Shown here: positions 39,817 to 42,686 of the stretch, in pieces | Layout: each line of letters opens with the position of its first letter | How positions within the stretch are numbered: position 1 is the first letter of the stretch | NCBI RefSeq assembly: GCF_041956535.1 | Contig: NW_027192211.1 | Coordinates: 74,044 to 138,043, forward strand | Reading direction: 5' to 3' | DNA from: Calcarisporiella thermophila CBS 279.70 | Taxonomy: Eukaryota; Fungi; Calcarisporiellomycota | Length of the DNA: 64,000 nt | Notes under the pieces: model-generated | Databases searched by the model: none | What the model was told of the DNA's origin: nothing | Seen by the model: only the letters and a program-made list of their open reading frames with translations | Translations under genes and position numbers: made by a program

Positions 39817-42686
39817 TTACAGGTGCCCATCGTCCACACGCTCAGGGAAGCTATGGGCAACTACACCTAGGTGCAGGATACGGCTGCCAGATTGACATAC
39901 TATCAGTTTCACATCAAATGGAGTTAGTTAGCTCGTATCATATTTTTGACATGAATCCGAAGCGTGATTGAGCCACATTTATTGAAAAGAAGGAATGATT
40001 TACCTGGATCCACACTCTTTCCAACCACAACACCATCCTCAGGAGCATAGTATGTCTTCTCCAGCTTCCCAAAAATCGAGTGCAGTGTCGCGATGGGGTC
40101 GCCCTTCTTAAGCCACGTATAGATATCGGGTATTACTAAAGGGGGAAAAGTGGATAGACCTCTGAGTTTACAGAATCTGTACGGAGAATGGAGAAACTTT
40201 AAGTTTTACCATTAAGAACACCCCCACCATCCGCAAAGATCCAGTAGCTTTTTGAACATATTACAGGGTCAAACTCTGGCAAGTCATGGTCATCAGGTAT
40301 CATTTTTAGGTGGGATAAGATATTCGTTACGCCTAGAAGTGCATTACGCACAAATCGTTTCTGTAGGAATGAAAGGGTTAAGTGAAAAGATGAAACAGAG
40401 TCTGAAGCAAAAATAAAATACTTGAAAACGGGAGGGGTCTCCGATTTCCACCGTGATCGCAGGAATACCCCTCTCCATCGCCGCACCTCGCAGCGAACCG
40501 TCAGGGCTGGTATTGTGTACAATAATTTGTGGGTGTTGTAGGCGCGCCATGCGACGAGTTCGAGGATTCGTCATATCCGCGCGGCAGTAGAGAGAGTTTA
40601 CACGTCCTTTTGAAGCCTAGACCCAACATATTATATAAACAAAGAGAGTTTTCACGGAAAAAAATTGGACCATACTGTATGCAAATCAAGTAAGTATTCA
40701 AACTTTGATATGACCCTCTCCATTAACTGGTAGGCGTATACTTGTGAAGTTGACCCGTTCTTCTTCCCAGGCATCAGACGATTTAAATCCTGCCCATCGC
40801 TAAATGTGCGAATTCCGGCAAGATATCCCGGAACATTTGCTACTGGTACAGCAACGACGATGCCATGCAGAGACGAACATTTGATATCCTGAGATAGGAG
40901 TCGATGTATTAAAGGAATACCATTCAGTTCGTTGCCGTGAAGGGCTGCAGTTCTATATAGGTCAAAGGCTAACTGAGTATGCTTTCAACTAATATCAAAA
41001 CAAGGAAAATATCTACAGCCCAACAACTGGCCCTGGCTTATTTCCTTTCGCCACAATAACTGGGATCTTGATATGAGCACTTAATCCATCCGACGCAAGT
41101 GCGACCCAAACACGCGATATTTTGCCCATGGGCAACGCATCCAAGTCTAGGTCAGTGATGGTGGGAACATCACTCTCTATTAAGCTAAGTGAGCAGTCAT
41201 GATCGGTCGGAGAGGAAAGCGGAACCCTTTTGCGCCATATCTTAAAGAAAAAGATAAAATATAGGTTGGTGAATGCAATTAACGCAATAGAATGTATACA
41301 ATGTTATGTAAACCTGTCGGGCTCGGTGCAGAAGATTTTCATCCCTTTCACTCTTCACAAATTTGCAGGCTGTAACTAGCGCCCACAGCTCCTTTCCAAC
41401 GGGGCTCCAAGCAATGCTGCGATTGAGAGAGGAATTCGATACCATGACACTCCCATCAGGAGTGATGCTCAGTAGGGCGCTTGTCCCGTTCAGCACACCA
41501 TTGACCACAGTGGGATGAGCTTGAAAGTGCTTGTCGTATTTCTTAAGGATTTTTTGAAATCCGGTTATATTGATCTTGGTATATTCTAAATGAAAATAAA
41601 TTTAAATTAAGTTATAGTTTTGCGCCCCGAGTGAAAGTTCACTTGACAATGGTTCGCACCAACTAAGTCTTCAAGCATATGCAGTAATGCCGTCATCTCT
41701 TCACGCCATACTCGTATTTCAGATTCTCCCCAATCTGGACGCCACTATTTTTAAATAGAGGGGGGGGGGGGCGCACATCAAATACCATAAAAAATAATAT
41801 AAAAAAAATAACACACGAACAGACGCGATATCGCGAGAGTTTCGAGCGGTCAATACGTCAAAATACGATAATAGACAAATCCTTTCACCAAATGTATAGG
41901 GAAACAAGGAATATCTAGCCATGCCCCAATTCTACACCCCAATTCTACTTCACCTGTTATATTAATTGCTCTAGTTTATGTTAGAAAAGGCTTGTATTGA
42001 ATACAAAACCAAAAGGTGGTGTTATTTGCAAGACTAGCAGAAAGCAAGTGTAAAATTAAACAGCTCGTTTTTAAAGTAGGACGGCGAAGAATGTCAATTT
42101 ACAATCGGAAGTGCATAAGTGATAAGCCAATACAAGTTTTTGCTACAAACTTGATGTATATAGCTTGTATAGCAGACATCCATTCCGGAGCTAACACCAA
42201 CTTATGCAAGGTGTTAACCTGTGGTGTCTAATAAAAGAGAACTTACCCAGCAAAATTTTCATTCCATAAATCTCACCCAGGAGGCCAAACAATGGTATGG
42301 GATAAGTAGAAGTTGGGGTGAAGAAAAGGGGCCATGTCCAAGAGTAAATCAAGTATTGAGAAACACTCGAAACTTACCTTAAGGTTTAATGCCTCAAGAT
42401 GCTCTGCTCCCGCATTGGACCTCACATCGTATATGCCTTCCACACGAGATAGCTCAGCCTCAAGAAGTTCACGGAAACGTTTATTAACCTTGTTAAGAAT
42501 GGCGGGATCATTGTTGTTTTCTATGTAAAATAAAGATATACAGTGAGTTTACGTAGCCAAATTTAGAAAGGGCACAGAGGTATTACCATGATACTCGTCG
42601 AATCCAACTCGAATGGCATGCTTGAGTCCTTTGTAGTCGAGAGCGTCTGGAATACCGCGAAGACAGAGTTGTTTAGCAAATTTCAT
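39817..42686 (-). CDS. SPX domain fused to AstE/AspA (succinylglutamate desuccinylase/aspartoacylase, M14) zinc hydrolase
   Basis: Hand-spliced in frame: MKFAKQL...LDYKGLKHAI...ELSRVE...|WRPDW...|EYTKINITGFQKILKKYDKH (SPX), then IPVIVAKG..PGPVVG|LTAALHGNELNG, DLNRLMPG, LLDLHT, AITVEIG, YAPEDGVVVG...RILHLG. Confidence 0.85.
41915..42343. mobile_element. Degenerate MITE-like insert in intron 2 of the SPX-deacylase gene
   Basis: Imperfect ~35-bp inverted repeats (catgccccaattctacaccccaattctactt ... aagtagaagttggggtgaagaaaaggggccatg). Host intron is 633 nt versus ~50-110 nt elsewhere. No clear TSD. Confidence 0.5.

What the first reader, a model, noticed from the sequence alone, without database searches (positions are those of the whole stretch)
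39817..42686. SPX-AstE/AspA fusion: candidate inositol-pyrophosphate-gated zinc deacylase/peptidase
Seen: short exons splice in frame with canonical GT-AG junctions into one protein. The N-terminal SPX domain retains MKF, YKxLK and the lysine cluster GFQKILKKYDK (~41530-41560). The C-terminal M14-type hydrolase has Zn ligands HGNE (40939-40928) and DLH, the DLNR substrate motif, catalytic Glu (TVEIG) and the beta-sandwich tail. Established: SPX domains bind InsP7/InsP8 through those Tyr/Lys residues. Known fungal SPX partners are VTC, EXS, CitMHS transporters, ANK/GDPD and RING; I know of no characterised SPX-M14 fusion. Inference: an enzyme linking phosphate status to hydrolysis of N-acyl-Glu/Asp or glutamyl-peptide substrates. 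The catalytic domain looks bacterial-type, so an old transfer followed by intron gain and SPX capture is possible. The ORF track shows only fragments, so automated annotation could split it.
Basis: partly seen in the sequence, partly recalled or inferred. Interest (0 to 1): 0.9.

Follow-up and report, generated by a model that had tools for sequence, protein, structure and literature searches.

The report
SPX sensor fused to zinc deacylase
This fungal gene really does join an intact phosphate-signal (SPX) sensor domain to an intact zinc amidohydrolase. The fusion is an old, widely conserved and already annotated eukaryotic protein family, but I found no paper that studies it.

Summary
A 10-exon, all GT-AG, minus-strand gene (42686-39817) encodes 553 aa. 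Exon by exon it is identical to the deposited protein VTP21DRAFT_5107 of Calcarisporiella thermophila, so it is already annotated as one gene.

Residues 1-205 form a complete SPX domain. Pfam scores it 34 bits against a cut-off of 27.8, and the AlphaFold model matches XPR1, Gde1 and Vtc4 SPX structures (TM 0.80). All six inositol-polyphosphate contact residues are present: Y18, K22, K125, K121, K124 and K128. They are kept in 44-48 of 50 orthologues.

Residues 223-553 form a complete AstE/AspA-family zinc deacylase. It resembles DoeB in fold (TM 0.83) but scores far below the DoeB, AstE and ASPA equivalog cut-offs. Zn ligands H280, E283 and H366 and base E424 are invariant.

The SPX+AstE_AspA architecture occurs in over 100 public proteins. 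These come from Mucoromycota, Zoopagomycota, chytrids, Saitoella, Pneumocystis, Balamuthia and plasmodiophorids. They form one clade, sister to a HutD-fused paralogue that this genome also carries. The nearest bacterial relatives (Bacteroidota) sit beside a glutathione-synthetase-like ATP-grasp ligase.

Six literature searches found no paper on the fusion. The substrate and the effect of inositol pyrophosphates are untested. No RNA data were available for this species. The scan had noted the HutD fusion before, on another contig of this genome.

The parts
39817..42686 (-). Whole coding region of the SPX-deacylase gene: 10 exons, 553 codons plus stop. It equals Calcarisporiella thermophila VTP21DRAFT_5107 (P0154).
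   Evidence: Exon translations are found in order in P0154, and all introns are GT-AG. P0154 is named.
42587..42686 (-). Exon 1. It holds the start codon and SPX helices alpha1-alpha2 (MKF...), with Y18 at 42635-42633 and K22 at 42623-42621.
   Evidence: Y18 and K22 align with ScVtc4 Y22 and K26.
42378..42520 (-). Exon 2, encoding the long SPX helix alpha3.
   Evidence: helix 39-81, pLDDT above 95.
41745..42377 (-). Intron 2, 633 nt and unusually long. No hidden exon is needed, and the sequence is unique in the genome.
   Evidence: The helix runs continuously across the exon 2/3 junction. The intron matches only itself in the genome. It holds one weak 18-nt inverted repeat.
41660..41744 (-). 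Exon 3, encoding the start of SPX helix alpha4.
41314..41585 (-). Exon 4. It encodes the end of SPX helix alpha4 with the lysine cluster (K121 at 41553-41551, K124 at 41544-41542, K125 at 41541-41539, K128 at 41532-41530). It also encodes a disordered insert (residues 134-166) and SPX helices alpha5 and alpha6.
   Evidence: Pfam SPX hit on this exon. The HMMER alignment to Vtc4 has an offset of +8. The PBC/KSC residue numbers come from PMC9911596.
41017..41240 (-). Exon 5. It encodes the end of SPX helix alpha6 (to residue 205, 41228-41226), a short flexible linker (208-222) and the first beta strands of the deacylase (from residue 223, 41174).
   Evidence: The conserved motif AR-x-[LI]-WRKR-x-P spans the exon 4/5 junction.
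40676..40952 (-). Exon 6, the N-terminal half of the catalytic domain. It holds Zn ligands H280 (40939-40937) and E283 (40930-40928), R323, DLNR (40789-40778) and Zn ligand H366 (40681-40679).
   Evidence: Pfam AstE_AspA_cat, E 2.7e-19. Alignment to 3cdx and 6twl. Invariance.
40422..40616 (-). Exon 7, the second half of the catalytic domain. It holds R372, Y377, H401, R410 and the catalytic E424 (40448-40446).
   Evidence: Pfam AstE_AspA_cat, E 2.3e-4. Invariance.
39817..40360 (-). Exons 8-10 (40360-40210, 40135-40004, 39899-39817). They encode the C-terminal beta-rich domain of the deacylase and a clade-specific tail ending in DDGHL, followed by the stop codon at 39819-39817.
   Evidence: (the alignment to DoeB runs to residue 540).

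Best explanation
The locus is one gene for a 553-aa protein with no transmembrane partner domain, so it is presumably cytosolic. Its N-terminal part is a complete SPX domain (residues 1-205, six helices). The basic surface that binds InsP6, InsP7 and InsP8 in Vtc4, XPR1, Gde1 and plant SPX proteins is present. A flexible linker of about 17 residues joins it to a complete, catalytically competent zinc amidohydrolase of the AstE/AspA family. This hydrolase belongs to the DoeB-like 'predicted deacylase' branch.

Most likely mechanism: the SPX domain reports cellular phosphate status by binding inositol pyrophosphates. That binding changes the activity of the attached hydrolase, either by relieving or imposing an intramolecular block or by changing its oligomeric state. 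The hydrolase cleaves an amide bond next to a free alpha-carboxylate. Candidate substrates are an N-acyl amino acid or a small isopeptide of the kind made by ATP-grasp ligases.

Shown here: gene structure, both folds, all ligand and catalytic residues, conservation of the fusion, and phylogeny. Inferred: InsP binding, coupling to catalysis, and substrate class. Unknown: the exact substrate and the sign of the regulation.
For: One gene: the exons equal P0154. A conserved motif spans the exon 4/5 junction between the two domains. The same two-domain architecture appears in more than 100 independent gene models across fungi, Amoebozoa and Rhizaria. It also appears in a complete ORF predicted from a transcriptome-assembly record, P0249.

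SPX: Pfam scores 34 bits against a cut-off of 27.8. Sequence hits to Vtc4 and XPR1 SPX structures. The model of residues 1-212 has pLDDT 87, and 41 of its 42 best Foldseek hits are SPX domains, the best with TM 0.80. The six Vtc4 contact residues (PMC9911596) are present and kept in 44-48 of 50 orthologues.

Hydrolase: Pfam E 1.7e-33. The fold matches DoeB 6twm, 3cdx and 3na6 with TM 0.80-0.84 by target length. H280, E283, H366, E424, R323, R333, R372 and R410 are kept in 49-50 of 50 orthologues.

Substrate class: the same pocket residues occur in the nearest bacterial clade. The genes examined from that clade (five loci, two proteins) sit next to a glutathione-synthetase/RimK-like ATP-grasp ligase. 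Solved relatives hydrolyse N-acetyl-diaminobutyrate (DoeB) and beta-Asp-Arg (CphZ).

Sensor-plus-enzyme logic: the sister paralogue carries a different N-terminal small-molecule-binding-type domain, HutD, on the same catalytic module.
Against: There is no transcript evidence for this species, because no RNA run was listed. No binding or activity data exist. The Calcarisporiella SPX lacks four residues of the alpha1-alpha2 hairpin that orthologues keep, and its first 10 residues are modelled with low confidence. The full-length model has pTM of only 0.64, so the relative position of the two domains is not defined. The interface test was not run by the tool. No RimK-type ligase was found in this genome, so the bacterial ligase context may not carry over. 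The phosphate-responsive promoter motif CACGTG is absent from the roughly 880 bp between this gene's start codon and the next gene upstream.
Confidence: 0.6

Rival explanations
1. The SPX domain does not gate catalysis allosterically. Instead it works as an inositol-pyrophosphate-dependent docking module, as in plant SPX-PHR or yeast Pho81. It would bring the hydrolase to a partner or target protein. The enzyme would then act as a peptidase on a protein C-terminus or side-chain amino-acid tag, analogous to M14 deglutamylases.
For: The nearest bacterial relatives are linked to ATP-grasp ligases related to RimK and glutathione synthetase, enzymes that add amino acids to carboxylates. The fold belongs to the carboxypeptidase clan, and distant hits include carboxypeptidases M, D and B. 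The poorly defined domain arrangement (pTM 0.64) would fit an SPX that faces outward.
Against: The closest solved relatives with known substrates act on small molecules (DoeB, CphZ, AstE, ACY3). No RimK-type ligase was found in this genome. No partner protein is known.
Confidence: 0.2
2. The SPX domain is a structural relic, or a stabilising or oligomerising module, without ligand control. The enzyme would then be a constitutive housekeeping deacylase.
For: Calcarisporiella has a 4-residue deletion in the SPX hairpin, and the N-terminus is modelled with low confidence. The Pfam score is only modestly above the cut-off. A few orthologues have substitutions in the lysine cluster.
Against: The six ligand-contact residues are kept in 44-48 of 50 orthologues from fungi, Amoebozoa and Rhizaria, which argues for selection on the binding surface. 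The full six-helix SPX fold is predicted with pLDDT above 90.
Confidence: 0.15
3. Gene-model artefact: two adjacent genes (SPX protein and deacylase) wrongly merged.
For: There is no RNA evidence for this species. Some database entries hold only the deacylase part.
Against: Only a 73-nt GT-AG intron separates the SPX exon from the next exon, which leaves no room for a terminator and promoter. A conserved motif spans that junction. The fusion recurs in more than 100 species and in a complete ORF predicted from a transcriptome-assembly record. Of the nine short or SPX-less entries inside the SPX clade, two are marked partial, three more have close relatives of the same genus or a neighbouring genus that carry the SPX domain, and the other four are unnamed ENA/JGI entries.
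Confidence: 0.03

Closest known systems
SPX-domain effector fusions (Vtc4 polyphosphate polymerase, Gde1 SPX-ANK-GDPD, Pho81, XPR1/Syg1 SPX-EXS, Pho87/90/91, SPX-RING ligases)
   Same: N-terminal position of the SPX domain. Six-helix fold, with TM up to 0.80 to XPR1, CtGde1 and Vtc4 SPX. Conserved Tyr/Lys phosphate-binding cluster and lysine surface cluster. The logic of a sensor domain in front of an output domain.
   Different: The output domain is a zinc amidohydrolase of the AstE/AspA family. None of six literature searches returned a paper that names SPX together with this hydrolase family. The SPX domain is minimal (about 135 aa plus two late helices). In Calcarisporiella it lacks four hairpin residues.
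DoeB/EutE N-acetyl-L-2,4-diaminobutyrate deacetylase (PDB 6twl, 6twm) and structural-genomics relatives 3cdx and 3na6
   Same: Best structural and sequence match in the PDB: TM 0.83 and E about 1e-16 to 1e-25. The Zn ligands, catalytic Glu and C-terminal beta domain are the same.
   Different: Only about 22% identity in the Foldseek alignment. The score is 69.6 bits against the equivalog cut-off of 402.7. R372 and R410, invariant in this family, are not matched in the DoeB alignment. DoeB has no SPX domain.
Bacteroidota 'predicted deacylase' in a cassette of unknown 487-508-aa protein, GSH-synthetase-like ATP-grasp and deacylase
   Same: Closest non-eukaryotic sequences, about 50% identical over the catalytic domain. 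They share the same pocket residues.
   Different: They are single-domain proteins of about 324 aa that end right after the HLGI strand and are encoded in an operon with a ligase. No such ligase was found in the fungal genome.
HutD-AstE/AspA fusion (Calcarisporiella VTP21DRAFT_10774, chytrids, Mucorales, Acanthamoeba)
   Same: Sister clade of the catalytic domain (support 91/94), with the same catalytic residues. It also carries an N-terminal putative ligand-binding domain.
   Different: The sensor is a HutD/Ves cupin instead of SPX. The conserved C-terminal tail is different (KENY versus DDGH[LM]). The taxon range differs: Mucorales have the HutD form, and none appears among the SPX hits listed.
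AstE succinylglutamate desuccinylase and ASPA/ACY3 aspartoacylases
   Same: Same Pfam catalytic domain and the same H-E-H zinc site with a Glu base.
   Different: Scores of 15-22 bits against cut-offs of 170-306, and weaker structural matches (TM 0.55-0.60). The protein should not be named after either enzyme.

Membership tests
SPX domain (Pfam PF03105) | Profile match above the curated cut-off | tested here: met
   P0154 scores 34.0 bits against the cut-off of 27.8, E 4.3e-8. Orthologues score up to 63.9 bits. Exon 4 alone scores 26.1 bits.
SPX domain (Pfam PF03105) | N-terminal helical hairpin plus long three-helix bundle and two short C-terminal helices | tested here: met
   The AF2 model of residues 1-212 has pLDDT 87 and helices at 3-11, 18-34, 39-81, 88-131, 171-187 and 190-205. 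In Foldseek, 41 of the 42 best hits are SPX structures. The best is 8tyu, with TM 0.80 and rmsd 3.1 over 208 columns.
SPX domain (Pfam PF03105) | Phosphate-binding cluster (Vtc4 Y22, K26, K133) and lysine surface cluster (K129, K132, K136) | tested here: met
   These correspond to Y18, K22, K125 and K121, K124, K128. They are conserved in 44-48 of 50 orthologues.
SPX domain (Pfam PF03105) | Binds InsP6 and inositol pyrophosphates | not testable with these tools
   This needs ITC or a similar assay with recombinant protein.
AstE/AspA zinc deacylases (Pfam PF24827) | Profile match over the whole catalytic domain | tested here: met
   116.3 bits, E 1.7e-33, residues 269-450 covering profile positions 1-192 of 192.
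AstE/AspA zinc deacylases (Pfam PF24827) | His-Glu-His zinc ligands, catalytic Glu, and Arg of the DLNR motif | tested here: met
   H280, E283, H366, E424 and R333 align with the same residues of 3cdx and 6twl. They are invariant in 49-50 of 50 orthologues.
AstE/AspA zinc deacylases (Pfam PF24827) | Two-domain fold (alpha/beta catalytic domain plus C-terminal beta domain) | tested here: met
   Foldseek gives 6twm TM 0.83, 3cdx 0.84 and 3na6 0.80, normalised by target length.
DoeB/EutE (NCBIfam TIGR02994, equivalog) | Score above the equivalog cut-off | tested here: not met
   69.6-71.1 bits against 402.7.
AstE (TIGR03242 / NF003706) and aspartoacylase (NF002601) | Score above the curated cut-off | tested here: not met
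   15.4-21.9 bits against cut-offs of 170-306.
Peptidase M14 proper (carboxypeptidase A/B type) | Match to an M14 profile | tested here: not met
   No M14 family appears among the Pfam hits of P0154 at E up to 0.1. The only link is distant structural similarity, with TM about 0.4 by target.

The most novel reading that the evidence does not exclude
This is a new output branch of inositol-pyrophosphate signalling. An ancient eukaryotic deacylase would have its activity set by phosphate status through SPX. Its sister paralogue would run the same chemistry under a different small-molecule sensor, HutD. That would make a sensor-swapped enzyme pair acting on an as yet unidentified N-acyl amino acid or isopeptide metabolite. 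The clade-specific C-terminal tails (DDGH[LM] versus KENY) might be part of the gating mechanism.
Probability: 0.35. Interest if true: 0.75.

Novelty: new variant of a known kind. Interest (0 to 1): 0.55.

Why it matters
Known SPX outputs handle phosphate directly: transport, polyphosphate synthesis, phosphodiester breakdown, CDK inhibition, ubiquitin ligation and PHR sequestration. An SPX-controlled amidohydrolase would link phosphate and inositol-pyrophosphate status to amino-acid-derived metabolism.

The family is conserved across early-diverging fungi, and Pneumocystis retains it. It is also present in Balamuthia and in the plasmodiophorid crop pathogens. None of the three protein searches, each listing only its best 87-150 hits, listed a Saccharomycotina, Schizosaccharomyces, plant or animal member. 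That could explain why it has not been studied.

It gives a soluble, single-chain system for asking how an SPX domain transmits ligand binding to an enzyme. Comparison with the HutD paralogue provides a natural control.

Tried and rejected
- RNA evidence: the look-up of sequencing runs listed no RNA run for the 3.1-kb stretch. Splice junctions rest on GT-AG sites, conservation and the identical deposited model.
Exons were searched one by one by reference. Full-length work used the database protein P0154 after I showed that it is identical exon by exon.
- Interface test: complex prediction of the SPX part against the catalytic part came back NOT FOLDED under a tool rule.
- Functional partner: neither Pfam RimK (PF08443) nor the Saprospiraceae ATP-grasp protein found a match in the own genome. 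This means 'not found with these queries', not absence.
- The 487-508-aa first gene of the bacterial cassette has no Pfam or NCBIfam hit.
- Pho4-type CACGTG motif: there are 7 in the window against 6 expected, and none upstream of this gene.
- MITE idea for intron 2: the intron matches only itself in the genome and has one weak 18-nt inverted repeat.
- Peroxisomal PTS1 reading of the C-terminal GHL: rejected. The conserved part is DGH, and several orthologues end differently.
- Other long N-terminal extensions in more distant homologues showed no Pfam domain.
- The DoeB structure paper was not in the searchable library, so I made no residue-by-residue comparison of the substrate pocket with published data.
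Full report
**Gene model.** On the minus strand between 42686 and 39817 I built ten exons from the raw sequence. They are 42686-42587, 42520-42378, 41744-41660, 41585-41314, 41240-41017, 40952-40676, 40616-40422, 40360-40210, 40135-40004 and 39899-39817. 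All nine introns are GT-AG, and the exons add up to 1662 nt. Each exon was searched on its own by reference.

Exon 4 hits Pfam SPX (E 1.1e-5). Exons 6 and 7 hit AstE_AspA_cat (E 2.7e-19 and 2.3e-4). A search of 1.84 billion representative proteins with exon 6, followed by a named search, returned P0154. This is 'uncharacterized protein VTP21DRAFT_5107 [Calcarisporiella thermophila]', 553 aa. Every exon translation is found in P0154 in order, and the five residues left over are the five split codons.

The window is therefore Calcarisporiella thermophila, and the gene is already deposited as one gene with exactly this structure. From here on, P0154 served as the full-length reference.

**Is the fusion real without RNA data?** No RNA run was listed, so the evidence is comparative.
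- The SPX exon 4 and exon 5 are separated only by a 73-nt intron. The family-wide motif AR-x-[LI]-WRKR-x-P spans that junction.
- The architecture PF03105 + PF24827 is precomputed for more than 100 proteins of independent genome projects. These include Glomeromycotina (Ambispora, Geosiphon, Paraglomus), Mortierellomycotina, Endogonales, Basidiobolus, Entomophthorales, Kickxellomycotina and many chytrids. They also include Saitoella and five Pneumocystis entries (P. jirovecii, P. oryctolagi and P. canis). Outside fungi they include Balamuthia mandrillaris, Spongospora subterranea and Plasmodiophora brassicae.
- One member, P0249, is a complete ORF predicted from a record with a transcriptome-shotgun-assembly-style accession.

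I put the two-gene artefact at about 3%.

**SPX domain.**
- P0154 scores 34 bits on Pfam SPX against a cut-off of 27.8. It matches the SPX sequences of Vtc4, Chaetomium Vtc4 and XPR1 in the PDB.
- An AlphaFold model of residues 1-212, built on 44 orthologues, has mean pLDDT 87 and pTM 0.79. It has six helices and a disordered insert at 132-170.
- In Foldseek, 41 of its 42 best PDB matches are SPX domains (XPR1 8tyu with TM 0.80, CtGde1 5ijj, Vtc4, rice SPX1).
- In yeast Vtc4 the InsP6 contacts are Y22, K26, K133 (phosphate-binding cluster) and K129, K132, K136 (lysine surface cluster) (PMC9911596). The HMMER alignment has an offset of +8, and the N-terminal alignment places these at Y18, K22, K125 and K121, K124, K128.
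- Across 50 orthologues these positions are conserved in 44, 47, 48, 47, 47 and 46 sequences.
- One peculiarity: Calcarisporiella lacks four residues of the alpha1-alpha2 hairpin (the W-x-x-Y-Y stretch of the orthologues), and residues 1-10 have low confidence.

**Hydrolase domain.**
- Pfam AstE_AspA_cat covers residues 269-450 (E 1.7e-33).
- The full-length model has pLDDT 86 and pTM 0.64. It matches DoeB/EutE 6twm (TM 0.83), 3cdx and 3na6. Weaker matches follow to CphZ, AstE and ACY3, and distant ones to true M14 carboxypeptidases.
- NCBIfam scores are far below every equivalog cut-off: DoeB 69.6 against 402.7, and AstE and ASPA about 20 against 170-306. The protein is therefore a member of the family but not of any named enzyme.
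- Zn ligands H280, E283 and H366, base E424, and R323, N332, R333, R372, Y377, H401 and R410 are invariant or nearly so.

**Relatives and history.**
- A second AstE/AspA locus in the same genome (contig C7) is a HutD-AstE/AspA fusion, deposited as VTP21DRAFT_10774. This form is widespread in chytrids, Mucorales, Umbelopsis and Bifiguratus. It is also present in Acanthamoeba, and Rozella has the catalytic domain alone.
- In a maximum-likelihood tree of 72 catalytic domains, the SPX-fused proteins plus Fonticula form a clade (UFBoot/SH-aLRT 96/90). The HutD-fused proteins plus Rozella form another (100/100). The two are sisters (91/94), and fungal SPX proteins form a clade (100/99) whose branching broadly follows taxonomy.
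- Both fusions are therefore older than fungi and are inherited mainly vertically.
- With a Saitoella query, no Dikarya other than Saitoella and Pneumocystis appear in the best 120 hits. This suggests loss in most Dikarya, although only the top 120 are listed.
- The nearest prokaryotic clade is about 50% identical and consists of Saprospiraceae, Lewinellaceae and Kordia, with a few Gammaproteobacteria. But the tree is unrooted and the event, if any, is ancient, so I leave the direction open.

**Clues to the substrate.**
- For the two proteins of that bacterial clade that I looked up (five loci), the deacylase gene follows a glutathione-synthetase/RimK-like ATP-grasp ligase. Before the ligase lies an unannotated gene of 487-508 aa.
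- The pocket residues are the same in the bacterial, HutD and SPX clades. The chemistry is therefore probably shared: hydrolysis of an amide of the kind such ligases make, next to a free carboxylate. This is inference.
- No RimK-type ligase was found in the fungal genome.
- Each eukaryotic paralogue has its own conserved C-terminal tail that the bacterial proteins lack: DDGH[LM] in the SPX form and KENY in the HutD form.

**Mechanism.** I commit to an inositol-pyrophosphate-gated zinc amidohydrolase. SPX binds InsP7/InsP8 on the conserved basic surface. Through the short linker (residues 208-222) it alters access to, or the geometry of, the active site or the oligomeric state. My confidence by step:
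- One gene with two intact domains: about 0.95.
- InsP binding: about 0.7.
- Coupling to catalysis: about 0.5.
- Substrate: unknown.

**Novelty.** Six full-text searches combined SPX or RimK with succinylglutamate desuccinylase, AstE_AspA, aspartoacylase, deacylase or the Pfam accessions. They returned no relevant paper. The one hit concerned GPI inositol deacylase. The architecture is visible in databases as 'SPX domain-containing protein', but it appears to be undescribed and uncharacterised. I class it as a new variant of a known kind (SPX-effector fusions), with interest 0.55. The scan's first stage had also noted the HutD fusion on another contig of this genome.

Noticed in passing
G000:C7:1163283-1165926 (L009:6283-8926, minus strand): The same genome holds a paralogous HutD-AstE/AspA fusion, deposited as VTP21DRAFT_10774 (681 aa). 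This architecture is widespread in chytrids and Mucorales and is present in Acanthamoeba.
   Followed up: yes
L003:3535-6975, L006:3051-6975: Saprospiraceae and related Bacteroidota carry a conserved three-gene cassette. It consists of a 487-508-aa protein with no Pfam or NCBIfam hit, a glutathione-synthetase/RimK-like ATP-grasp ligase, and the deacylase closest to the eukaryotic enzymes. Its product is unknown.
   Followed up: partly
window 41745-42377: Intron 2 is 633 nt, far longer than the other eight introns (58-82 nt). It matches nothing else in the 28-Mb genome and has only one weak 18-nt inverted repeat, so there is no sign of a multi-copy element.
   Followed up: yes
window 42644-42636 (around residues 15-17 of exon 1): Calcarisporiella lacks four residues of the SPX alpha1-alpha2 hairpin (the W-x-x-Y-Y stretch) that most of the other aligned orthologues keep. 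The effect on ligand binding is unknown.
   Followed up: partly
window 39858-39820 (last 13 codons): There are clade-specific conserved C-terminal tails. The SPX paralogues end in DDGH[LM], the HutD paralogues end in KENY, and the bacterial homologues stop just after the HLGI strand. The tails may be a regulatory or active-site element.
   Followed up: partly
P0246 (Fonticula alba, 771 aa); P0360-P0363 (Balamuthia): Fonticula's protein falls inside the SPX clade but shows no Pfam SPX hit in its 480-aa N-terminal part. Balamuthia has annotated shorter isoform variants (345-437 aa) of its SPX-deacylase gene.
   Followed up: no
G000, loci: About nine other loci in the genome hit Pfam SPX on contigs C1, C4, C6, C12, C15, C21 (two) and C23. 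Their partner domains were not examined.
   Followed up: no
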